Virus record (IMG/VR): IMGVR_UViG_3300017971_000185
Coordinates: 310,001 to 374,000 of that record
DNA length: 64,000 nucleotides
Direction: 5' to 3' (one strand)
Part shown: positions 690-60,075 of the stretch, one piece after another
How the letters are laid out: each line of letters opens with the position of its first letter
Numbering within the stretch: the stretch's first letter is position 1
Translations under genes and position numbers: made by a program
Notes under the pieces: generated by a model
Seen by the model: only the letters and a program-made list of their open reading frames with translations
Told to the model about the DNA's origin: nothing
Database searches by the model: none

Positions 690-707
690 GTAGTGCGTCC
701 AGAACGC

Positions 708-781
708 GCGCTGAGAGGGGGTCGAACCCTCGACCTTCCGGGCGAATACCCCGGCTGCTCGGCCTACTGAGCTTCCAGCGC
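708..781 (-). ncRNA. tRNA-like cloverleaf with a non-canonical anticodon loop, in the 5' region of the Pth-like gene
   Basis: Acceptor GCGCTGG/TCAGCGC, D arm GCTC/GAGC, stem CCGGG/CCCGG with loop GTATTCG, T arm GAGGG-TTCGACC-CCCTC. Confidence 0.7.
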
Positions 782-1376: not shown

Positions 1377-1946
1377 GTGACCGGCCTCGGTGCGGATACC
1401 TGGCCCGTATCCGACACTTCGCGCCCCGCTGCTTTTGGATCTACGATCCGGCCTTACAGCGATTGGGAGGAGTATAGATGGCCTGGGGGGCGCCCGTCAA
1501 CGCGCCTGGCGCGCGAAGGTTGGTCTATTTTGTGCCGATTCGGCGTATTCTGTAGGTGGATGATGGTCGAATTGGAACATCCTCTGGAGTCGATCGCGGC
1601 TGTGATGGCGTTCTCCACTCTAGACATGAAGCGGAAGTCCCAAGCAGCTTGGGAGGGGGATCGTGTGTGGAACAGCATTGCAGTTTCGCCGGACAGGCCC
1701 CCGATTGATTGGTTGTCCGATCCAAGACTCGCGTGGGTTTGGGGTGTCGTCCACGGCTGGGGTCCAGAAGACGAGGACTGGCATAGAGCGGCCAACGTAA
1801 TCGGTTGGGATGATAGCACTCTCGATCGTTTGCGACGACTTCATCGCAAGTACCGGAATCTTCGTGCTAGTCAGATTGTACGTTCCTACATGAAGATGAT
1901 CGGCATTGCAGAGGAGACTGCTCGTGATCTGGGAGATCTTCCATGA
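1377..1946 (+). CDS. hypothetical protein
   Basis: 189-aa ORF coupled to the next ORF by an ATGA overlap at 1943. Confidence 0.5.
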   Translation: MTGLGADTWPVSDTSRPAAFGSTIRPYSDWEEYRWPGGRPSTRLAREGWSILCRFGVFCRWMMVELEHPLESIAAVMAFSTLDMKRKSQAAWEGDRVWNSIAVSPDRPPIDWLSDPRLAWVWGVVHGWGPEDEDWHRAANVIGWDDSTLDRLRRLHRKYRNLRASQIVRSYMKMIGIAEETARDLGDLP

Positions 1947-2308
1947 ATGAACAGAAGCAAACGTGGTTTCCTCTCGACGCCAGCACGACGGAACAGCATC
2001 GTGCTTGGGGGCTTTTGGTGTACCGCAATGACGGACAGACACGAGGGCACGTAGCGGGCACCATTGTGATGGCTCGCATGGGTGAGGCCAGTGGGGTGGT
2101 GTTTGTGCCGCATGAGCTAATGCCCGCGCCTCGAAAGGGATGACAGTCGAGCACATCCAGAGCGCCGTGGTTCACTCCTGGCGCTGCACGGTCTGCAAGT
2201 ACGAGTGGGATGTCTACGGAGGAGACCCCTACGACTACGACCCGGATGAGGAGCCGGTAGGTCCGGTGCCGGACAGTTGTCCTCGTTGCGGGCCTTGGCA
2301 GCCTACCG

Positions 2309-3780: not shown

Positions 3781-3854
3781 GAGGACGTATCGGCCCAGTC
3801 TCCTAAACTGGCAAGCCGTAATGGATGATGGGGGTTCGAGTCCCTCCGTCCTCA
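3781..3854 (+). tRNA. atypical tRNA-Arg(CCT) lacking a normal D arm
   Basis: Acceptor GAGGACG/CGTCCTC, anticodon arm CCAGT-CTCCTAA-ACTGG, T arm GGGGG-TTCGAGT-CCCTC; D region reduced to TATCGGC. Confidence 0.65.
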
Positions 3855-14310: not shown

Positions 14311-14653
14311 TCGGTCGAGAGGATGAGGAGATCGCAGCCGCAAGGCTGAGGAAAGTCCGGGCTCCGTAGAGCAGCGTGCTTGGGAAATCCAAGTCGGGGC
14401 GACCCGCAGGAAAGTGCCGCAGAAAGCAAACCGCCGATGGCCTTCGGGCACAGGCAAGGGTGAAAGGGTGGGGTAAGAGCCCACCGGGTTCCTGGCGACA
14501 GGGATCGCATGGTAAACCCCACGCGGAGCAAGACAAACAGAGAGCGCTGAAGTTGCTCGCCTAGCTCTCGGGTTGTCGCAAAGATGAATGATCGCCACCT
14601 GGCAAGGGCAACCGACCCAGGGACAGAACCCGGCTTACGACCCTCTCGGCCGA
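14311..14653 (+). ncRNA. rnpB: RNase P RNA (bacterial type A)
   Basis: GAGGAAAGTCCGGGCTCC, GGAAAGTGCCGCAGAAA, GGTAAACCCCAC..GGAGCAAG and ACAGAACCCGGCTTA; P1 TCGGTCGAGAGG/CCTCTCGGCCGA. Confidence 0.95.
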
Positions 14654-23277: not shown

Positions 23278-23306
23278 TTGACTTTGGCTCTGTCTGTCCG
23301 TACAAC
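23278..23306 (+). promoter_or_regulatory. sigma70-like promoter of the Pro/Arg/Leu/Tyr tRNA operon
   Basis: TTGACT-N17-TACAAC. Confidence 0.7.
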
Positions 23307-23326
23307 TGCATCTGAGGCGGAAAGCC

Positions 23327-23446
23327 ATGACACAAATGCGGAACACACTCGGGTTGAGCACCTACCAGTCATTACTGGCGGGGAGGCTCCCCTTGCGTCC
23401 GTATTTGCGCCCGCTGCCGCCACCCCGACTTAGGGGCGCCCTCTAG
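23327..23446 (+). CDS. leader peptide MTQMRNTLGLSTYQSLLAGRLPLRPYLRPLPPPRLRGAL
   Basis: 24 of 39 codons are Leu, Pro, Arg or Tyr, the amino acids of the downstream tRNAs. Confidence 0.75.
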   Translation: MTQMRNTLGLSTYQSLLAGRLPLRPYLRPLPPPRLRGAL

Positions 23447-32405: not shown

Positions 32406-32434
32406 TTGACTTCCAGCAGGAAGAGGCGTACACC
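32406..32434 (+). promoter_or_regulatory. sigma70-like promoter of the Thr/Asp/Val tRNA operon
   Basis: TTGACT-N17-TACACC. Confidence 0.6.
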
Positions 32435-32482
32435 CGTTCTAGTCGCTCCCCTTGGCAGGACAGCGACGGAAACATTCACGCC

Positions 32483-32578
32483 ATGACGAAACGCACCACA
32501 ACAACAGCTATGCTCAGTGCCCGAGTGGCCCTGCATGGCTTTGTACGTCCAAATATGGACGATACGACCCCGTGTTGA
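32483..32578 (+). CDS. leader peptide MTKRTTTTAMLSARVALHGFVRPNMDDTTPC
   Basis: 7 Thr codons (ACG, ACC, ACA) plus GAC/GAT and GTA/GTG. Confidence 0.75.
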   Translation: MTKRTTTTAMLSARVALHGFVRPNMDDTTPC

Positions 32579-32901: not shown

Positions 32902-33049
32902 GGGAGACACAGGATCTCGTTTCGAGGTCACAAGCACGGTAAGACGCAGCATTCATAACGCTGAGACTGTGGGTTCAATCCCCACCCCCGCTTTCATGGC
33001 GGGGTAGTCAAATCGCAAGAACACCTGACACACTCTCCTGTGTCCTCCC
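32902..33049 (+). ncRNA. Y-like RNA: tRNA mimic opened in the D loop, acceptor stem closed, CACAAGC/CACTC module
   Basis: Outer stem GGGAGACACAGGA/TCCTGTGTCCTCCC; order 3' D strand, anticodon arm (CAT), T arm, CCCCGC-loop-GCGGGG, 5' D strand. Confidence 0.75.
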
Positions 33050-33094: not shown

Positions 33095-33220
33095 ATGCCT
33101 GACGATGATGACGATGACGATGATCGCTTGCCCGCGTTGGTGAAGTCTGGTCTATCACGCTTGGTTGTCAGCCAAGAGGTCATGGGTTCAAATCCCATAC
33201 GCGGGGCTGGAGGTCCGTAA
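33095..33220 (+). CDS. leader peptide MPDDDDDDDDRL..., reading through tRNA-Asp
   Basis: SD AAGGAGG; 8 consecutive GAC/GAT codons ending 6 nt before tRNA-Asp. Confidence 0.8.
   Translation: MPDDDDDDDDRLPALVKSGLSRLVVSQEVMGSNPIRGAGGP
33131..33206 (+). tRNA. tRNA-Asp(GTC)
   Basis: Cloverleaf, loop TT-GTC-AG, G73. Confidence 0.9.
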
Positions 33221-39765: not shown

Positions 39766-39769
39766 GTTT

Positions 39770-39853
39770 TTCTCCCCGAGCGACGGCGCTTTCGCCAACT
39801 CCGTCAGGACCGGAAGGTAGCAGCGGTAACGGAGGACCGGGTGCTCGGGGGAA
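39770..39853 (+). ncRNA. ffs: small SRP RNA (4.5S-like)
   Basis: Helix-8 motif GTCAGGACCGGAAGGTAGCAGC inside a hairpin closed by CCCCGAGC/GCTCGGGG. Confidence 0.85.
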
Positions 39854-39905
39854 CGTTTCACCGAGCCGGGGTCGTCGGTGGGCGCTTATCGCCGCGGAGA
39901 GGCGT

Positions 39906-40087: not shown

Positions 40088-40156
40088 ATGGACGACGACA
40101 TTAGCGACATTATCCGACATGGGTTCGTAGCTCAGTTGGTTAGAGCGCTGCCCTGA
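40088..40156 (+). CDS. leader peptide MDDDISDIIRHGFVAQLVRALP, reading into tRNA-Ile
   Basis: ATT..ATT ATC ending 6 nt before tRNA-Ile(GAT); stop lies in the anticodon loop. Confidence 0.6.
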   Translation: MDDDISDIIRHGFVAQLVRALP

Positions 40157-40737: not shown

Positions 40738-41114
<377 letters not shown>

Positions 41115-42284: not shown

Positions 42285-43106
42285 ATGGCACTCGCTCACT
42301 TCAGCAAGCTCGGTCCTGCTCCGTTCACCGTCGCTGACATGATTGGCCCGGATGACGCGATCTACGGTGGCTCGGACCCATTCGAGGGCGTCGAGGGTGC
42401 CCATGACCGTTGCGAGTGCTGCGGCAAGAAGCTGTCCTGGCGAGTGCTTCTCGTTGATGGCGCTGGCAAGCCTCATGTCGTTGGCCGATCCTGCGCCGCG
42501 CAGGCTGAGGATTTGAAGGGTGTTTCGCTACGGGACGCAGAGTTGAAGGCGAAGCGCCGGGTGCTCGACACTTGGATGACGAGCGAGCATGGTGCGGCTT
42601 TTCGCGAGTGGGCATCGAAGGTGCCTCATCCGAAGGGTTGGAGTGGTCGCTCGCTGCTCGATGACCTTCGGTACTGGACTCGACGCAAAGGCGCGGATGC
42701 CCTTCCAAAGATCCGCAAGGCGCTCAAGGCGTTTGGTGCGGGCGATGCTGCTGAGCTACTGGAGGAGGAGCGCAAGGCCGAGGCTCACAGGGAAGCGAAG
42801 AAAAGGCGCAAGGCTGCCTACGACATTCGGTACAGGCTCCGTTCCAAGTTGGAAGAGGAGAAGAGGACGGATCCTTGGGAAGTACATGAGTGGTTCAAGG
42901 CGCGCCATCTGAATGATTTGGACGCGGACCCTGCATTCCTTGCCAAGTACAACGCACAGGAAGAGGCGAAGCTGAGGAAGCTCTATGGTGAGCCGAAGGA
43001 TTGGGATGCACGGTTCGCTGCTCTTGAAGCCATGACGGACGATGAGCTTTGGACCGCGGCCGAGAAGGCTGGTTGGGTGTATCGAGGAAGGCTCAACGGG
43101 TGCTGA
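42285..43106 (+). CDS. hypothetical protein with CECCG/VGRSC motifs
   Basis: 273-aa ORF directly after the phage promoter at 42247. Confidence 0.6.
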   Translation: MALAHFSKLGPAPFTVADMIGPDDAIYGGSDPFEGVEGAHDRCECCGKKLSWRVLLVDGAGKPHVVGRSCAAQAEDLKGVSLRDAELKAKRRVLDTWMTSEHGAAFREWASKVPHPKGWSGRSLLDDLRYWTRRKGADALPKIRKALKAFGAGDAAELLEEERKAEAHREAKKRRKAAYDIRYRLRSKLEEEKRTDPWEVHEWFKARHLNDLDADPAFLAKYNAQEEAKLRKLYGEPKDWDARFAALEAMTDDELWTAAEKAGWVYRGRLNGC

Positions 43107-43123
43107 GCGAGAGGCTCGGTAAC

Positions 43124-43603
43124 ATGCCTTCTGTGGCTGAGCTATCCTTCCAGACGGCGATCTCGCGGACACGTCTCTCGGCTCCCTCGGCTTACTTGCT
43201 GGATCAGGGGTTGCTGAAGGGGCGCATCCTCGACTTCGGCTGTGGGAAAGGCGACCTAGCCAAGTTTCTGGACGGAGACATCGAGGAGTACGATCCCCAC
43301 TATGCCCCGAAGCGGCCACGGGGGAAGTTTGATGTGGTCGTCTGCAACTACATCCTCAACGTTCTTCCCGAGAAAGATCAGCGCAAGGCTCTCCGAGATG
43401 CGCTTTCGTTTCTCCGCAAGGATGGTGTTCTCTACGTGACCGTTCGTCGCGATCTGGAGAAAGAGGCCACCACCACACTCGGGAAACGGCAGTTTCATGT
43501 GGACTTGCGGATGCCGTCCCTTGTGCATCGCCGTGGGCGATTCGAGATCTACGCCATCAGCGCCGAGCATGTGCGTAAATCAGCAGCCAGATGGCGGCCC
43601 TGA
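43124..43603 (+). CDS. class I SAM-dependent methyltransferase
   Basis: ILDFGCGKG, YDP, FDVVVCNYILNV; start uncertain. Confidence 0.8.
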   Translation: MPSVAELSFQTAISRTRLSAPSAYLLDQGLLKGRILDFGCGKGDLAKFLDGDIEEYDPHYAPKRPRGKFDVVVCNYILNVLPEKDQRKALRDALSFLRKDGVLYVTVRRDLEKEATTTLGKRQFHVDLRMPSLVHRRGRFEIYAISAEHVRKSAARWRP

Positions 43604-43609
43604 CGATGC

Positions 43610-43638
43610 TTGACAACGGCCTGGAGACCAGCTACAAG
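43610..43638 (+). promoter_or_regulatory. sigma70-like promoter of the tRNA-Lys operon
   Basis: TTGACA-N17-TACAAG. Confidence 0.7.
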
Positions 43639-43647
43639 GTCTTAGTC

Positions 43648-43680
43648 ATGTCCGGTATCCGTCTGAAACGCAAGACCTAG
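43648..43680 (+). CDS. leader peptide MSGIRLKRKT (probably leaderless mRNA)
   Basis: Contains both AAA and AAG; pairs with the 5' end of tRNA-Lys. Confidence 0.65.
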   Translation: MSGIRLKRKT

Positions 43681-43719
43681 CCCGAGGGAAGTCCCCTTGG
43701 GCTGGTAGAAGTGCGTTTT

Positions 43720-43795
43720 GGGCCGGTAGCTCAGTAGGCAGAGCGGCGGACTCTTAATCCGCAGGTCGAGGGATCGTCACCCTCCCGGCTCTCCA
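43720..43795 (+). tRNA. tRNA-Lys(CTT) with atypical T loop ATCGTCA
   Basis: Cloverleaf with CCA. Confidence 0.88.
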
Positions 43796-43874
43796 ACGAG
43801 GATAGTGCCGAACCTGCATGCAGTCGGTGCCCCTCGGGTGCGGATCGAGTGCAAGGCGAAGATCCGCACCACCT

Positions 43875-43947
43875 GGGCTCGTAGCTCAATCGGTAGAGCG
43901 ACGGACTTTTAATCCGTAGGTTTTCGGTTCGATTCCGAACGGGCTCG
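43875..43947 (+). tRNA. tRNA-Lys(TTT)
   Basis: Cloverleaf. Confidence 0.92.
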
Positions 43948-44580
43948 CTGTTTTTGAAAGAGAGCTTTGAGTGCTGGAGAAGGTTCCTTCGGCGGACTGT
44001 TGAGGATCTCCAGCAGCCGTTTCATCGCGGGCTCGGGAAGCCGGATGATGGGGTCGATGACCCACTTCTCGCTCTCGTCTCGCTCACTCGACATCGCTTA
44101 GAATCTTACCACCCATAGAGCCTGGTTTTAGCGATCTCGATCGCTCGCTGAAGCGTTAAGCCGTCTCCTTGTTCTTTGCGGCCTCCGGCGTCGGTTAGCT
44201 CGACTTGCCAATGCCCGCACTCTTGCCAGATCGTGACTTGGGTACGGCAGCTAGGTCGATAGCTCGGGTTCATCTGGCCCTTGCGCCTGGCATCCTCGCG
44301 GACCGAACGGCAGAAGAACAGATGGAGTGTGTCTTCGATGGTCGGCGTCAGCCTTCCGATTGGGTCGATGCGCATGTGCATGTCCGGTGGTGAAGCAAGT
44401 GGCGTACCGGACGTGATTTCGCGGGCTTAGGTCGCTCAGCGTCGGTTGTGGCGGGGGATTGCCGCCTGCCTGTCGGCAAATTCACCGACAGGGTAGCCAA
44501 TTGGAGAGGGCTCGGGTATAGTCTGGAGCGTGGCGGTGACGCCACGTTCTCACCAACGGCCAAAGCCAAAGGGTGGGTCA

Positions 44581-45780
44581 ATGACCAAGAGCCGCAAACA
44601 GCGACAAGCTGATCAGCTTGGAATGCCGATTGGGACTGCGCGAAGCAAGCTCCAACGGAAGATCATCTGGGACCTTCTGGTTCGCCAGGGGGAAAACCAA
44701 TGCGCTCGCTGCGACGATTGGATCAACTCAGCCGAGGACTTGGCCATCACCCACATCGAGCCCTGGCTCGATAACGACCCAGAGTTGTTCTGGGATCACA
44801 ACAACGTCGCCTTCATGCACCCGACCTGTGCCGAGGAGTATGCATCAGAGAGGGAGGCTGCACGGCGGCAGAAAGAGCGCGACATGGAAATCGTAAGAGT
44901 AGGAATCATCAACGAGCGAGGAGAATGGCTCCCAGGTTGCTTCCACGATGGGAAGGTCTACGTCGTCGGCAAACATGGTAGCCGGTACAGCATCCACTTG
45001 CGCAATCTCACCGGAGAGCGCATCGAGGTCGTGCTCACGGTCGATGGGCGCGATGTGATCACGGGAGAGGAAGGCTCCACGAAGAATCGTGGATACATCC
45101 TTCACGCTTTCGAGACATGCACGATCGAGGGCTGGAGAACGAGCGACGAAACCGTTGCGGCCTTCCGTTTCGGAGCAGACAAGGACAAGGCGTACTCGAC
45201 ACAGCTAGGAACCGGAGCCCATCTCGGGGTGATCGGTGTGGCTGTCTTTCAGGAGTACTTCAGGCCGCAGTCTTCGTTCACCATCCTGCGGAGTTGCGGA
45301 TACTCCAGCGACTCCATACCTGTCGGCGCGAGCGCGGAGAGCGTGAAGATTTCGGCTTCGACAGAGACGAGTGGCGGAGCAACCTATTCTGTTTCGTGCA
45401 ACAACGTCAGCGACGAACCGATGTTGGGGTTCTCCGACGAGTCACGCAGGGCGTCACGCAGGGAGCGAGAGGAGCGGGCTCAGGCCCCGCTCCGTCGTCG
45501 CAGTATGAGGCGGAAACGGTTGGTCGAGGAACAGGAGCCTCGCGAGGAAGTCAAGCTCGGAACCAAGTTTGGAGAGGAGCGTCGGTCGAAGGTAGGCAAG
45601 ACGACTTTCACACGTCGGACTACGGAGGCTGCCTGGACGCTCACCATCGAGTACGACACGTTCAAGAACCTCAAGAGACGGGGCATTCCGATCAAGCGGA
45701 CGCAGCCGAAGAAGGAAGCGCCCACACCGAGTGCCTTCCCTGCCGACAACGAGTACTGCAAGGCTCCGCCGCGGAGGTAG
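44581..45780 (+). CDS. fusion of a degenerate HNH-like domain with an uncharacterised beta-rich domain
   Basis: CARC..HIEPW..NVAFMH; VLTVDGRDVITG..IEGWRTS..AAFRF..GVIGVAVF. Confidence 0.65.
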   Translation: MTKSRKQRQADQLGMPIGTARSKLQRKIIWDLLVRQGENQCARCDDWINSAEDLAITHIEPWLDNDPELFWDHNNVAFMHPTCAEEYASEREAARRQKERDMEIVRVGIINERGEWLPGCFHDGKVYVVGKHGSRYSIHLRNLTGERIEVVLTVDGRDVITGEEGSTKNRGYILHAFETCTIEGWRTSDETVAAFRFGADKDKAYSTQLGTGAHLGVIGVAVFQEYFRPQSSFTILRSCGYSSDSIPVGASAESVKISASTETSGGATYSVSCNNVSDEPMLGFSDESRRASRREREERAQAPLRRRSMRRKRLVEEQEPREEVKLGTKFGEERRSKVGKTTFTRRTTEAAWTLTIEYDTFKNLKRRGIPIKRTQPKKEAPTPSAFPADNEYCKAPPRR

Positions 45781-47468: not shown

Positions 47469-47497
47469 TTGACGGGCCGCCTAACGTCCGCTACAAG
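47469..47497 (+). promoter_or_regulatory. sigma70-like promoter of the tRNA-Glu/Asn operon
   Basis: TTGACG-N17-TACAAG; same GCTACAAGG..GTCATG layout as the Lys operon. Confidence 0.7.
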
Positions 47498-47506
47498 GGT
47501 GTTGTC

Positions 47507-47593
47507 ATGTTGAGTCGTCTGAATACCAGCCCGCGCAGGCCCGCTCTCGTTGAACGAGAGCGCGAGGCTGAAGTACGCCTGCGCGGGGAGTAA
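47507..47593 (+). CDS. leader peptide MLSRLNTSPRRPALVEREREAEVRLRGE
   Basis: 5 Glu codons (GAA and GAG) in the 3' half. Confidence 0.75.
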   Translation: MLSRLNTSPRRPALVEREREAEVRLRGE

Positions 47594-47645
47594 CACAGAC
47601 GGTTCCAGACAACAGAGACCGCTGCCCCGCGCAGGAGCTTCACGC

Positions 47646-47718
47646 GCGGGCATCTTCCAAATGGTCAGGATCTCGGCCTTTCAAGCCGAAGATACGGGTT
47701 CAAGCCCCGTTGTCCGCA
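47646..47718 (+). tRNA. tRNA-Glu(TTC)
   Basis: Cloverleaf, loop CT-TTC-AA. Confidence 0.88.
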
Positions 47719-48705: not shown

Positions 48706-49506
48706 ATGGGCAGCAAAAGCTCACTTGGGGACCGCATGAAGCGATACGAGCAAGTGCCGCGCACATCGCTCACGCCCCGGACTCCCATGATTATCCGCAT
48801 CGATGGGCGGGCGTTTCACACGTACACGAAGAACATGCAGAAGCCGTGGGACCCGGTTCTGCGGGATGCTCTCACGGCCGCTGCACAGGAGCTTCTGCGC
48901 GAGATTGCTGGAGCGAAGCTGGCTTACCTCCAGTCGGACGAGATCTCTGTGCTCGTGACCGACTACGACAAGCTCACGTCGCAAGCGTGGTTCGACAAGG
49001 TGGCCCAGAAGATCTGCTCCGTGTCGGCGTCTATCACCACAGCCGTCTTCAACCGCGGCGTACTGGAGACTTTCCTTGGGCGCTACGATGTTCGCGAGTT
49101 GAAGGGGGCTGACGGCAGTCTCGACACAGCGATGCTTCCTCCTCCGGCACATTTCGACAGCCGATGTTTCGTGGTCCCGCGTGAGGATGTCACCAACTAC
49201 TTCGTGTGGCGCCAGCAGGACAGCACGCGAAACTCCGTCTCGGCTCTCGCGCAATCGCACTTCTCACATGAGGAGCTACAAGGCAAGAAGTGGGGTCAGA
49301 TGCAGGAGCTACTGTTCCAGGAGAAGGAGATCAACTGGAACGACTGCGAGACCTGGCAGAAGCGTGGTTGGTGTGTCTTGCGGAGCACTGTGGAGATCGA
49401 ACCGGGCAAGATGCGAGTGATCGTTGAGCCGGACCTGGAGGTCCCTGTTTTCTCCAACTATCGCGCGTACATCGAGAAGTATCTTCATTTGGACACGGAC
49501 GCCTAG
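48706..49506 (+). CDS. thg1: tRNA(His) guanylyltransferase Thg1-like protein
   Basis: IIRIDGRAFHTYT, YLQSDEIS, FDSR, YFVWRQQD..RNS. Confidence 0.92.
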   Translation: MGSKSSLGDRMKRYEQVPRTSLTPRTPMIIRIDGRAFHTYTKNMQKPWDPVLRDALTAAAQELLREIAGAKLAYLQSDEISVLVTDYDKLTSQAWFDKVAQKICSVSASITTAVFNRGVLETFLGRYDVRELKGADGSLDTAMLPPPAHFDSRCFVVPREDVTNYFVWRQQDSTRNSVSALAQSHFSHEELQGKKWGQMQELLFQEKEINWNDCETWQKRGWCVLRSTVEIEPGKMRVIVEPDLEVPVFSNYRAYIEKYLHLDTDA

Positions 49507-56883: not shown

Positions 56884-56912
56884 TTGACAAGGGCTCAGAG
56901 GGCGCGTAGAGT
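56884..56912 (+). promoter_or_regulatory. sigma70-like promoter of the Arg/Ser/Gly/Ala/Trp/Cys tRNA operon
   Basis: TTGACA-N17-TAGAGT. Confidence 0.75.
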
Positions 56913-56927
56913 CTCCCTGAGGTCAAA

Positions 56928-57080
56928 ATGTTTACCCCAGTCCAAACCATCGTTGAGAACGCACGCTACGCAGCACCCGCCATTGCGGCTGCCGCCGCGG
57001 GATCGTGTGCCTCCGATTGGTCAGGACTCGGTACACGGCCCAGTAGTGGTGCTCTGTCCAGGCAGAGACGCTCCGTTTAG
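56928..57080 (+). CDS. leader peptide MFTPVQTIVENARYAAPAIAAAAAGSCASDWSGLGTRPSSGALSRQRRSV
   Basis: SD GAGGT; 11 Ala, 7 Ser, 4 Gly, plus TGT, TGG and AGG/AGA. Confidence 0.75.
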   Translation: MFTPVQTIVENARYAAPAIAAAAAGSCASDWSGLGTRPSSGALSRQRRSV

Positions 57081-58100: not shown

Positions 58101-58172
58101 GCGTGTGTAGCTCAGTTGGCAGAGCATCAGCTTCCATGCTGAGGGTCGCGGGTTCGATCCCCGCCACATGCT
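58101..58172 (+). tRNA. tRNA-Gly-type body with a 6-nt anticodon loop (probably a defective Gly(CCC))
   Basis: TCAGC-TTCCAT-GCTGA. Confidence 0.65.
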
Positions 58173-58191
58173 CGAAAGGAAGAACATGAAC

Positions 58192-58559: not shown

Positions 58560-58934
58560 ATGGCACAGATCACCAAAGAACAGGTCATTGACTATCTGGG
58601 GGCCCTCTCGCCTTCGGAAATGGCTATCCTCATCGAGAACCTGGAAGAGACGTGGGGCATGGAGATGTCCCGGCCAACTCAGCAAGCACCGAAGGTCGAG
58701 CAAGAGAAGGAGGAAGAACAGACGGAATTCGAGGTCATACTTGAGAGTTTCGGAGACAAGAAGATCGACGTGATCAAGACCGTTCGCCAGGAGAAGCCGG
58801 GGATGGGTCTCAAGGAAGCAAAGGAGTTTGTCGAGTCTGCGCCGGTTACGATCGGTGAGGCGCTCTCAAAGGAGGAAGCAGAGGAAGCCAAGGCCAAGCT
58901 GGAGGAGGCAGGCGCAACGATCACGATCAAGTAA
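58560..58934 (+). CDS. rplL: 50S ribosomal protein L7/L12
   Basis: EEQTEFEVIL..GDKKIDVIK.VR...GLKEAKEFVESAP..SKEEAE..KAKLEEAGA. Confidence 0.95.
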   Translation: MAQITKEQVIDYLGALSPSEMAILIENLEETWGMEMSRPTQQAPKVEQEKEEEQTEFEVILESFGDKKIDVIKTVRQEKPGMGLKEAKEFVESAPVTIGEALSKEEAEEAKAKLEEAGATITIK

Positions 58935-59013: not shown

Positions 59014-59072
59014 AGGGACGTAGCTCAATGGAAGAGTGCCGGAAGCTGCGGGTTCGAATCCCGTCGTCTCCA
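59014..59072 (+). ncRNA. anticodon-arm-less tRNA-Ala-like RNA
   Basis: Acceptor with G3:U70 and A73; D and T arms present; only GCCGGAAGCT between them. Confidence 0.65.
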
Positions 59073-60034: not shown

Positions 60035-60067
60035 ATGGAACACGAACGATGGCGAGGCTGTCCGTAA
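60035..60067 (+). CDS. leader peptide MEHERWRGCP
   Basis: SD AAGGAGG; TGG and TGT codons; stop lies in the loop of a GCTGTCC/GGACAGC hairpin, just before tRNA-Trp and tRNA-Cys. Confidence 0.7.
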   Translation: MEHERWRGCP

Positions 60068-60075
60068 GGACAGCT

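What the first reader, a model, noticed from the sequence alone, without database searches (positions are those of the whole stretch)
43610..43947. Ten-codon Lys leader sequesters the 5' end of tRNA-Lys
MSGIRLKRKT uses AAA and AAG, matching Lys(TTT) and Lys(CTT). TCTGAAACGCA (43662-43672, containing the AAA codon) pairs with TGCGTTTTGGG (43712-43722), which spans the RNase P site and the first three tRNA nucleotides. The inner hairpin is CTAGCCCGAGGG/CCCTTGGGCTGG. tRNA-Lys is the classic target of PrrC and PARIS (established). The ATG lies near the expected start site, so the mRNA is probably leaderless.
Basis: partly seen in the sequence, partly recalled or inferred. Interest (0 to 1): 0.75.

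Follow-up and report, generated by a model that had tools for sequence, protein, structure and literature searches.

The report
Codon-sensing leaders before phage tRNAs
In a 497-kb phage, the tRNA-Lys pair and at least eight other tRNA clusters are each preceded by a tiny reading frame rich in the codons those tRNAs read, folded against the tRNA's 5' end, which suggests the phage matures each tRNA only when that tRNA runs short.

Summary
A promoter (TTGACA, 17 nt, TACAAG) is followed 9 nt later by ATG 43648, a 10-codon ORF (MSGIRLKRKT) and a 12-bp hairpin. An outer helix pairs ORF bases 43656-72 with 43712-28, which is the RNase P site plus tRNA-Lys(CTT) nt 1-9.

In relatives whose neighbouring gene is 81% identical (64% at third codon positions), the 33-nt ORF is 100% identical. 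All leader changes lie in the hairpin loop or at -1/-2.

The Lys leader is one of a family in this phage. Upstream mini-ORFs match the downstream tRNAs:
- Asp: eight Asp codons behind AGGAGG
- His: HHH
- Thr: TTTT
- Gln: MRRQQDQT
- Glu: 5 of 27 codons
- Pro/Arg, Trp+Cys and Ile
- Arg/Ser: weaker

Label permutation gave 0 of 3000 as extreme; a control roseophage showed nothing.

In a divergent relative, the Glu leader keeps its frame through four 3n indels. Its four mutually exclusive helices, one covering the tRNA 5' end, carry compensatory changes.

Best reading: ribosome-sensed leader attenuation whose output is pre-tRNA folding or RNase P access, not termination. No precedent was found. The PrrC/PARIS link is untested, and translation is inferred.

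The parts
43610..43638 (+). Promoter: -35 TTGACA (43610-15), 17-nt spacer, -10 TACAAG (43633-38)
   Evidence: Both hexamers are conserved and the spacer varies in relatives L026-L029. Of 12 TTGACN-17-TANANN sites in the 497 kb, 7 sit 110-251 nt upstream of a tRNA cluster.
43648..43680 (+). Ten-codon leader ORF MSGIRLKRKT* (AAA 43666-68, AAG 43672-74), starting 9 nt after the -10
   Evidence: It is 33/33 nt identical in relatives whose MTase gene is 81% identical. A 2-nt insertion upstream in the relatives breaks the longer in-frame ORF from 43591.
43656..43672 (+). 5' strand of the outer helix (anti-junction), lying inside the ORF
   Evidence: MFE and pair probabilities of 0.72-0.999.
43675..43706 (+). 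Inner hairpin. The 5' arm contains the stop codon. The 3' arm is a pseudo-acceptor copy.
   Evidence: The stems are identical in relatives and only the loop differs. TTGGGCTGGTAG (43697-43708) repeats the junction TTGGGCCGGTAG (43718-43729).
43712..43728 (+). 3' strand of the outer helix: leader -8..-1 (RNase P site) plus tRNA nt 1-9
   Evidence: The relatives have U changed to CC at -1/-2, and pairing is kept in a shifted register.
43720..43795 (+). tRNA-Lys(CTT), CCA encoded
   Evidence: ARAGORN; Rfam, 60 bits.
43875..43948 (+). tRNA-Lys(TTT)
47469..47593 (+). Paralogous Glu module: TTGACG-17-TACAAG, 9 nt, ORF 47507-47593 MLSRLNTSPRRPALVEREREAEVRLRGE* (GAA x2, GAG x3)
   Evidence: The relative L043 keeps the ORF in frame.
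47530..47650 (+). Glu leader switch regions: R1 47530-39, R2 47578-88, R3 47625-35, R4 47643-50 (tRNA-Glu starts at 47646)
   Evidence: Repeats. Compensatory G-C to A-U changes occur in all four regions in L043.
33095..33130 (+). Asp leader: AGGAGG, 7 nt, ATG CCT, then 8 Asp codons (33101-33124), reading into tRNA-Asp (33131)
40738..40786 (+). His leader MLTTAHTDDEPHHHTY, reading into tRNA-His (40787)
32406..32578 (+). Thr module: TTGACT-17-TACACC; ORF 32483-32578 MTKRTTTTAM... (7 Thr; ACG, ACC, ACA) ahead of three tRNA-Thr genes
   Evidence: Thr-codon segment 32488-32500 pairs with 32573-85.
23278..23446 (+). Pro/Arg module: TTGACT-17-TACAAC; ORF 23327-23446 ending ...RLPLRPYLRPLPPPRLRGAL*, ahead of the tRNA Pro-Arg-Pro-Pro cluster
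   Evidence: The Pro-codon run 23410-26 pairs with 23453-69 across the stop-codon hairpin 23438-56.
60035..60075 (+). Trp/Cys leader: AGGAGG, ATG..., MEHERWRGCP*. Hairpin GCUGUCC-GUAA-GGACAGC ends at -2 of tRNA-Trp (60076); tRNA-Cys follows.
40088..40120 (+). Ile leader MDDDISDIIRH, reading into tRNA-Ile (40121)
56884..57080 (+). Candidate Arg/Ser module: TTGACA-17-TAGAGT; ORF 56928-57080 ending ..AGG CAG AGA CGC TCC GTT TAG, 6 nt before tRNA-Arg(TCT) and three tRNA-Ser genes
   Evidence: The enrichment is weaker than in the other modules.

Best explanation
The Lys leader is one member of a phage-wide set of cis-acting, ribosome-read sensors placed in front of tRNA genes.

**Start of the transcript (inferred).** Transcription begins at or within about 4 nt of ATG 43648, giving a leaderless or near-leaderless mRNA.

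**Closed state (shown in silico).** With no ribosome on it, the leader closes into a nested structure. The hairpin 43675-43706 is enclosed by a helix between ORF bases 43656-72 and 43712-28. This buries positions -8..-1, the RNase P site, and can also invade tRNA nt 1-9.

**Open state (inferred).** A ribosome that lingers on the early or middle codons of the ORF, up to the AAA codon, holds the 5' strand. The junction is then single-stranded, the cloverleaf forms, and RNase P (the phage encodes its own RNase P RNA) can cut. A ribosome that runs quickly to the UAG buried in the hairpin and leaves lets the structure re-close.

**Net effect (inferred).** Shortage of charged tRNA-Lys leads to more mature phage tRNA-Lys.

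**Same principle elsewhere in the phage.**
- Nested or four-region leaders: Glu, Gln, Thr and Pro/Arg.
- ORFs whose cognate-codon run abuts and then reads into the tRNA: Asp, His and Ile. There, fast translation would plough into the tRNA and unfold it, while stalling would spare it.

The output appears to be RNA folding and processing rather than transcription termination.
For: **(1) Anatomy and fold.**; leader-only z = -5.1 in two lineages.

**(2) Selection**.
- The ORF is 33/33 identical, against 81% for the adjacent MTase (64% at third positions) and 80% for the tRNAs themselves.
- All 7 leader differences fall in the hairpin loop or at -1/-2.

**(3) Promoter**.
- 7 of 12 TTGACN-17-TANANN sites in the genome precede tRNA clusters.
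- The -10-to-ATG distance is 9 nt in Lys, Glu and the L043 Glu module, whose -10 varies from TAAGGT to TAAAAT between L043 and L044.

**(4) Cognate-codon match.**
- Genome-wide score 32.8 against 13.0 +/- 3.2 in label permutations, 0 of 3000 as extreme. An earlier variant gave p = 0.0004.
- A control roseophage with 31 tRNAs gave p = 0.9.
- Asp: 8 of 11 codons after an AGGAGG Shine-Dalgarno. Trp/Cys: AGGAGG, then an ORF holding one TGG and one TGT.

**(5) Lys and Gln leaders are paralogous.** Both have the same TACAAG promoter, NAA at codon -4, NAG at codon -2, then ACY, UAG and a hairpin. Only the first base of the sensor codons is swapped, A to C.

**(6) Glu module compared with L043** (flanking protein 61% identical).
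- Four indels, all multiples of 3.
- The stop codon is kept just after R2.
- G-C to A-U compensatory changes keep the 1:2, 2:3 and 3:4 pairings.
- R4 covers tRNA-Glu nt 1-5.

**(7) Footprint modelling for Lys**.
- No ribosome: P(acceptor stem) = 0.02.
- A-site on codons 2-7, including AAA: 0.84-0.99.

**(8) Pseudo-acceptor repeat** in the hairpin 3' arm.

**(9) Phage-encoded RNase P RNA** at 14315-14653, 247 bits.
Against: - No RNA data exist: no RNA run was listed for this phage. Transcript start, translation and processing are all inferred.
- The Lys ORF has only two Lys codons (p about 0.03 alone), no Shine-Dalgarno sequence, and no synonymous variation that could show coding constraint.
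- The leader-junction duplex alone is not better than shuffles. Predicted acceptor disruption by upstream sequence is common in this genome (20 of 46).
- The sequestered fold beats the cloverleaf-compatible fold by only 2.1 kcal/mol, and tRNA tertiary structure is not modelled.
- Simple footprint modelling does not fit a naive 'stall at the cognate codon = on' rule everywhere. For Lys, a stall at AAG (codon 9) or at the stop codon is predicted 'off'. For Glu, the 'on' window (A-site codons 5-15) ends just at the first Glu codon unless the ribosome shields about 15-18 nt upstream or ribosomes queue.
- Only two lineages per module could be compared, and none for Gln or the read-in type.
Confidence: 0.6

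Rival explanations
1. An untranslated structured 5' leader. The conserved nested stem would be a processing or stability element, for example an RNase III or RNase E entry site, or a 5' protective stem, or a small RNA released by RNase P. The two Lys codons would be incidental.
For: Conservation is at the nucleotide level, 33/33 including third positions. There is no Shine-Dalgarno sequence. The roughly 29-bp irregular helix is of RNase III size. The Lys codon count alone is weak.
Against: It does not explain the genome-wide match between mini-ORF codon content and downstream tRNA identity (0 of 3000). It also leaves unexplained the A-to-C swap of sensor codons between the paralogous Lys and Gln leaders, the AGGAGG-ATG starts of the Asp and Trp/Cys ORFs, and the frame-preserving indels in the Glu ORF.
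Confidence: 0.2
2. A classical transcription attenuator. The nested stem followed by UUUU (43716-19) would be an intrinsic terminator that stops RNA polymerase just before the tRNA unless a ribosome stalls at the Lys codons.
For: An A-tract (GAAA, 43665-68), a stem and a U-tract resemble a terminator. The leader-peptide logic is the same as in the trp, his and thr operons (textbook knowledge).
Against: The terminator scan did not call it. The U-tract is only 4 nt and is UUUCC in the relatives. The Glu, Gln, Thr, Pro and Trp/Cys leaders have no U-tract after their last helix. In the Glu leader the last helix includes tRNA nucleotides.
Confidence: 0.1
3. Direct RNA-RNA sensing without ribosomes, in the manner of a T-box. 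The cognate codons in the leader would pair with the anticodon of free tRNA, or of the downstream tRNA in cis.
For: Cognate codons are by definition complementary to the anticodons. The end of the Gln ORF is 76% complementary over 17 nt to the tRNA-Gln anticodon arm.
Against: No T-box or other known leader family was found in Rfam. Runs of 3-8 codons placed in frame behind ATG and AGGAGG, and 3n indels, point to translation.
Confidence: 0.05
4. The mini-ORF encodes a functional basic decapeptide.
For: The peptide sequence is conserved in the relatives, but trivially so, because the DNA is identical.
Against: The sister leaders encode unrelated peptides whose only common property is cognate-codon content. 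Identity at third codon positions argues for RNA-level constraint.
Confidence: 0.03

Closest known systems
Leader-peptide (ribosome-mediated) transcription attenuators of amino-acid operons (trpL, hisL, thrL, pheL, leuL; pheM of pheST)
   Same: There is a short ORF at the start of the transcript, enriched in the codons whose decoding reports the regulated product. It overlaps mutually exclusive RNA helices. In the Glu leader the stop codon sits next to region 2. The predicted logic is the same: shortage turns expression on.
   Different: The regulated genes are tRNAs, not biosynthetic enzymes or synthetases. The final helix is not an intrinsic terminator but covers the RNase P site and the acceptor 5' strand. 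Three modules are leaderless. The elements are carried by a phage.
Translational attenuation by stalled ribosomes (ermC, cat and cmlA leaders)
   Same: A ribosome paused in a short leader ORF melts a helix and exposes a sequestered downstream site on the same RNA. The output is post-transcriptional.
   Different: In those systems the stall is drug-induced and the exposed site is a ribosome-binding site. Here the stall would be codon- or tRNA-dependent and the exposed site is a tRNA 5' end.
T-box riboswitches
   Same: Both are cis-leaders that couple the status of one specific tRNA to expression of translation-related genes through a specifier codon.
   Different: T-boxes bind tRNA directly without ribosomes, have conserved Stem I and T-box motifs, and control synthetase or amino-acid genes. 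No Rfam match was found here.
Phage T4 tRNA cluster and other phage tRNA arrays
   Same: These are phage-encoded tRNA operons co-transcribed with extra small RNAs and processed by RNase P. The proposed roles are codon supply and escape from anticodon nucleases (PMC10264068).
   Different: No cognate-codon leader ORFs are described for them. A cultured roseophage with 31 tRNAs shows no such signal.

Membership tests
Ribosome-mediated leader-peptide attenuation | A short ORF with a usable start at the 5' end of the regulated transcript | tested here: met
   The ATG lies 9 nt after a conserved -10. Sister ORFs sit behind AGGAGG. This holds at sequence level only; translation itself cannot be tested here.
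Ribosome-mediated leader-peptide attenuation | The ORF is enriched in codons cognate to the regulated product | tested here: met
   The genome-wide permutation gave 0 of 3000. Lys alone has 2 of 9 codons (score 1.56), which is weak by itself.
Ribosome-mediated leader-peptide attenuation | Mutually exclusive RNA helices overlapping the ORF, supported by covariation | tested here: met
   The Glu module has four regions with compensatory changes. For Lys, nested helices are predicted and conserved, but there are no informative substitutions in the stems.
Ribosome-mediated leader-peptide attenuation | The output helix is an intrinsic terminator (G+C stem plus U-tract) | tested here: not met
   No terminator was called at 43677-43722. 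The tract is U4 in the window and UUUCC in relatives. The other modules have no U-tract.
Ribosome-mediated leader-peptide attenuation | Ribosome stalling at the regulatory codons changes expression | not testable with these tools
   No RNA run was listed. Only footprint-constraint folding was possible, and its results were mixed.
T-box riboswitch | Stem I specifier loop and the conserved T-box antiterminator motif | tested here: not met
   Rfam at E <= 5 on 43000-44600, and at gathering threshold on the whole window, returned only tRNA, RNase P and SRP.
Known Rfam amino-acid operon leaders (Thr, His, Leu, Trp leader families) | A match to the family covariance model | tested here: not met
   No hits.
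Counter-defence against tRNA-Lys anticodon nucleases (PrrC/PARIS context) | Specific association with tRNA-Lys or with tRNA repair genes | tested here: inconclusive
   The same leader design serves at least 9 amino acids. RtcB is absent. The Rnl1 search was uninformative because its controls did not ring. A Thg1-like 5'-repair enzyme is present.

The most novel reading that the evidence does not exclude
A huge phage regulates maturation of its own tRNAs one amino acid at a time. Each tRNA operon carries a mini-ORF that lets the host ribosome test the charged pool of exactly that tRNA. The ribosome's dwell time decides whether the pre-tRNA 5' end is released for RNase P, which the phage also encodes. 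This would be a new class of processing attenuator. It would also be the first case of leader-peptide control of tRNA genes, giving the phage on-demand tRNA supply across hosts or under tRNA-depleting defences.
Probability: 0.55. Interest if true: 0.92.

Novelty: new variant of a known kind. Interest (0 to 1): 0.85.

Why it matters
Why phages carry large tRNA sets, and how they control them, has been debated for decades; codon supply and escape from tRNA-targeting defences are the main ideas. Cognate-codon leader ORFs in front of tRNA genes would show that a phage measures the charged pool of individual tRNAs and answers by maturing its own copy.

That would extend leader-peptide attenuation to a new gene class (tRNAs) and a new output (RNase P access or acceptor-stem formation).

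The hypothesis is directly testable. The modules are 100-200 nt and self-contained, and they make clear predictions: swapping AAA/AAG for CAA/CAG should convert a Lys sensor into a Gln sensor.

The design could also serve as a compact set of amino-acid-specific or tRNA-specific sensors.

Tried and rejected
**Searches for relatives**
- BLAST of the locus against cultured phages matched only the tRNAs.
- IMG/VR holds only the same phage (L001, L024, L081). Pattern scans for the tRNA, the Lys leader, the Glu leader and a generic Lys/Gln-type module gave unrelated or chance hits. Of 92 generic-pattern hits, only this phage's two modules have a tRNA downstream.
- The single JGI metagenome scan found only the phage itself plus 3 chance hits.
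- More distant MTase homologues (P0003-P0014) and HTH homologues (P0128, P0130) are not next to such leaders, or their contigs end too early.
- L032 has three tRNA-Lys genes but no comparable leader.
- Close variants L041 and L042 are identical in the leader.

**RNA evidence**
- No RNA-seq run was listed.
- The DNA contigs laid on the locus first revealed the relatives, but their sequences could not be exported.

**Other checks**
- The leader is not a repeat family in the genome.
- No Rfam family matches beyond tRNA.
- No sigma-70 consensus promoter or terminator was called by the strict scanner at this site. The promoter became evident only from conservation and recurrence.
- GTG/TTG-initiated mini-ORFs added no new modules.
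- The Gln run of the footprint model used a wrong frame and is disregarded.
- Six literature searches found no description of leader ORFs before tRNA genes.

Full report
**Context.** The window is bases 310001-374000 of a single 497,194-bp virus record. The record has 57.7% G+C and is rated 94% complete by CheckV. It recurs in sediment and seawater metagenomes. It carries 46 tRNA genes, 44 of them in the window, spread among small ORFs.

**The observation.**
- A SAM-methyltransferase gene ends at 43603.
- TTGACA follows at 43610-15, then 17 nt, then TACAAG at 43633-38, then 9 nt, then ATG 43648.
- The ORF reads ATG TCC GGT ATC CGT CTG AAA CGC AAG ACC TAG.
- tRNA-Lys(CTT) is 43720-43795 and tRNA-Lys(TTT) is 43875-43948.
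A hairpin at 43675-43706 is enclosed by a helix of 43661-72 with 43712-23, plus 43656-59 with 43725-28. Together these cover leader positions -8..-1 and tRNA nt 1-9.
- The leader alone folds 5 SD better than dinucleotide shuffles, in the window and in a relative.

**Limits of the fold evidence.**
- The duplex by itself is not exceptional: 22 of 200 shuffles are as good.
- In this G+C-rich genome the acceptor stem of 20 of 46 tRNAs is predicted to be disrupted by 110 nt of upstream sequence.
- A cloverleaf-compatible alternative is only 2.1 kcal/mol worse. It keeps an 8-bp core, GAAACGCA/UGCGUUUU, that ends exactly at -1.
- A fully paired -6..-1 stretch occurs in only 3 of 46 tRNAs.

**Comparative evidence for the Lys leader.**
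- Contigs from other sediment runs laid on the locus showed relatives at about 85% identity in which the leader was much better conserved than its flanks.
- I recovered such relatives through the methyltransferase (P0002, 85% aa): L026 (JGI) and L027-L029 (Logan). They share the order DUF3228, MTase, leader, tRNA-Lys(CTT), tRNA-Lys(TTT).
- In the alignment the -35 and -10 are conserved and the spacer varies. Two bases are inserted between the -10 and the ATG.
- The 33-nt ORF is 100% identical.
- The hairpin stems are identical and only the loop differs.
- The only other change is U to CC at -1/-2.
- By contrast, the MTase gene is 81% identical (64% at third positions) and the two tRNAs are about 80% identical.
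- In the relative the helix re-registers, so that CCGGU of codons 2-3 pairs with tRNA G3-G7.
- The 2-nt insertion breaks the longer in-frame ORF from ATG 43591 that gene callers had annotated. The conserved frame, if it is one, therefore starts at 43648.
- The hairpin's 3' arm, TTGGGCTGGTAG (43697-43708), is a near-exact direct repeat of the junction TTGGGCCGGTAG (43718-43729). It acts as a pseudo-acceptor, and its partner arm could alternatively bind the real acceptor strand.

**The Lys leader is not alone.**
- A search for the promoter form found that TTGACN-17-TANANN occurs 12 times in the genome. Seven of these sites lie 110-251 nt upstream of a tRNA cluster on the same strand.
- Three share TACAAG followed after 7-9 nt by ATG: Lys, Glu (47469) and Gln (genome 376264, minus strand, just outside the window; L045).
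- The Gln ORF is ATG CGT CGC CAA CAA GAC CAG ACT TAG. It is followed at once by a 12-bp hairpin and then tRNA-Gln(CTG).
- Aligned from the stop codon, Lys and Gln both have NAA at -4, NAG at -2, then ACY, UAG and a hairpin. The sensor codons differ only in their first base.
- The Glu ORF (47507-47593) has GAA x2 and GAG x3, ahead of tRNA-Glu(TTC) and tRNA-Glu(CTC).

**Systematic listing of upstream ATG mini-ORFs** added these:

| tRNA(s) | Leader ORF | Position |
|---|---|---|
| Asp | AGGAGG, then MP + 8 Asp codons | Ends 6 nt before tRNA-Asp and reads into it |
| His | MLTTAHTDDEPHHHTY | Reads into tRNA-His |
| Ile | MDDDISDIIRH | Reads into tRNA-Ile |
| Thr | MTKRTTTT... (ACG, ACC, ACA) | Before three tRNA-Thr genes |
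| Pro/Arg | ...RLPLRPYLRPLPPPRLR... | Before the Pro-Arg-Pro-Pro cluster |
| Trp/Cys | AGGAGG, then MEHERWRGCP | Before tRNA-Trp and tRNA-Cys |
| Arg/Ser (weaker) | Ends AGG CAG AGA ... | Before tRNA-Arg(TCT) and three tRNA-Ser genes |

- Shuffling the amino-acid labels among the 29 cluster heads gave a summed score of 13.0 +/- 3.2, against 32.8 observed (0 of 3000). The same test on roseophage DSS3_MAL1, with 31 tRNAs, gave p = 0.9.
- The Pro and Thr leaders repeat the Lys architecture. The cognate-codon segment pairs with a downstream segment across a hairpin that contains the stop codon.

**Independent support from the Glu module.**
- A relative whose flanking HTH protein is 61% identical (L043/L044) keeps TTGACT-17-TAAGGT (TAAAAT in L044), then 9 nt, then ATG.
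- Its ORF, MFLSNLNTDPHGLSRLSERESEACLCGGN*, differs from the window's by four indels, all multiples of three. The stop codon again sits just after region 2.
- The leader has four regions: R1 47530-39 and R3 47625-35 (the 10-mer CCCGCGCAGG is identical in both), R2 47578-88 (their complement), and R4 47643-50. R4 spans the RNase P site and tRNA-Glu nt 1-5.
- In L043 all four regions carry the matching G-C to A-U change, so the 1:2, 2:3 and 3:4 pairings are all kept. Two of the four mixed-lineage pairings are clearly weaker.
- This is the topology of a trp-type attenuator. The difference is that the 3:4 helix sequesters a tRNA 5' end and has no U-tract.

**Mechanism.**
- What is shown: the structures in silico, their conservation and covariation, the cognate-codon statistics, and the promoter recurrence.
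- What is inferred: the transcript start, translation, stalling and the effect on RNase P.
- Footprint-constrained folding of the Lys transcript gave P(acceptor stem) = 0.02 with no ribosome. With the A-site on codons 2-7 (AAA is codon 7) it gave 0.84-0.99. At AAG (codon 9) or the stop codon it gave 0.06-0.14, because the freed pseudo-acceptor then competes for the acceptor 3' strand.
- For Glu the 'on' window is A-site codons 5-15, when the ribosome covers R1. It ends at the first Glu codon unless the ribosome shields more upstream RNA or ribosomes queue. The exact stall geometry is therefore unresolved, and I count this against a naive model.
- None of the leaders ends in a canonical terminator. 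I therefore favour control of folding and processing over control of termination.
- The phage encodes a class-A RNase P RNA (247 bits) and a Thg1-like tRNA 5'-end enzyme in the same island. This fits an investment in tRNA 5' maturation.

- The anatomy, the near-leaderless start and the idea of a Lys-codon sensor stand, and they are considerably strengthened by the sister modules.
- The specific tie to PrrC or PARIS is not supported by anything here. The design is generic across at least nine amino acids. No RtcB was found, and the Rnl1 search was uninformative.

**Novelty.** Six full-text searches found no report of leader ORFs or attenuators in front of tRNA genes, in phages or elsewhere. Absence from that library is not proof. 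I class the finding as a new variant of leader-peptide attenuation, with a new target class and a new output, and rate its interest as high.

Noticed in passing
window 14315-14653 (+): The phage encodes a full-length bacterial class-A RNase P RNA (Rfam RF00010, 247 bits).
   Followed up: partly
window 39767-39859 (+): A small bacterial SRP (4.5S-like) RNA gene lies inside the tRNA island (Rfam RF00169, 57.7 bits).
   Followed up: no
window 48706-49506 (+): This ORF has Thg1 and Thg1C domains (tRNA-His guanylyltransferase / 3'-5' tRNA 5'-end repair family, E = 5e-30). It lies next to the tRNA-Asn and tRNA-Glu genes.
   Followed up: partly
window 58560-58934 (+): A phage-encoded ribosomal protein bL12 (L7/L12 C-terminal domain, E = 5e-27) lies directly upstream of tRNA-Ala(GGC).
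   Followed up: partly
window 706-781 (-), promoter at about 900-872: This tRNA has the unusual anticodon ATT, with C at position 37. It sits behind its own TTGACA-17-TAGAGT promoter. Its 4-codon upstream ORF (MKSE) has no Asn codon.
   Followed up: partly
window 58101-58173; 59014-59072; 3781-3854: ARAGORN calls a tRNA with an undetermined two-base anticodon at 58101. Rfam finds two further tRNA-like hits (44 and 36 bits) that ARAGORN does not call.
   Followed up: no
window about 32920-32995: A tRNA-like remnant with a GGTTCAATCCCCACC T-arm lies between tRNA-Thr(GGT) and the Asp leader. Neither tool calls it as a tRNA.
   Followed up: no
window 43796-43874: The 79-nt spacer between the two tRNA-Lys genes contains a perfect 10-bp hairpin (GGTGCGGATC...GATCCGCACC). 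It is absent in relatives L026-L029, where the tRNAs are 2-10 nt apart.
   Followed up: partly
window 42285-43106: This 273-aa ORF between the DUF3228 gene and the methyltransferase is missing from relatives L026-L029 and from contigs of run X17 (an 893-nt skip).
   Followed up: partly
L045 about 1480-2052 (-), which is genome 375480-376052: An HNH-type endonuclease ORF is inserted between tRNA-Gln(CTG) and tRNA-Gln(TTG). A similar HNH-like ORF abuts tRNA-Lys in L032.
   Followed up: no
window 43665-72 and 32488-95: The Lys and Thr leaders share the octamer GAAACGCA (Lys-Arg codons). In each it pairs with a downstream GCGTTT segment, which suggests common ancestry of the modules.
   Followed up: partly
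window 43909-44094 (-): A 61-aa ORF on the opposite strand overlaps the 3' end of tRNA-Lys(TTT). It has a weak TacA-antitoxin-like match (E = 0.003, below the family cut-off). L026 has a PDDEXK_5 gene plus a TacA-like gene at the same place.
   Followed up: no
L025 9637-9794: An unrelated AT-rich tRNA-rich phage contig has a 52-codon, Glu/Lys-rich ORF that ends exactly at tRNA-Lys(CTT). The cognate-ORF test on this contig gave p = 0.014, so a weaker version of the phenomenon may exist elsewhere.
   Followed up: partly
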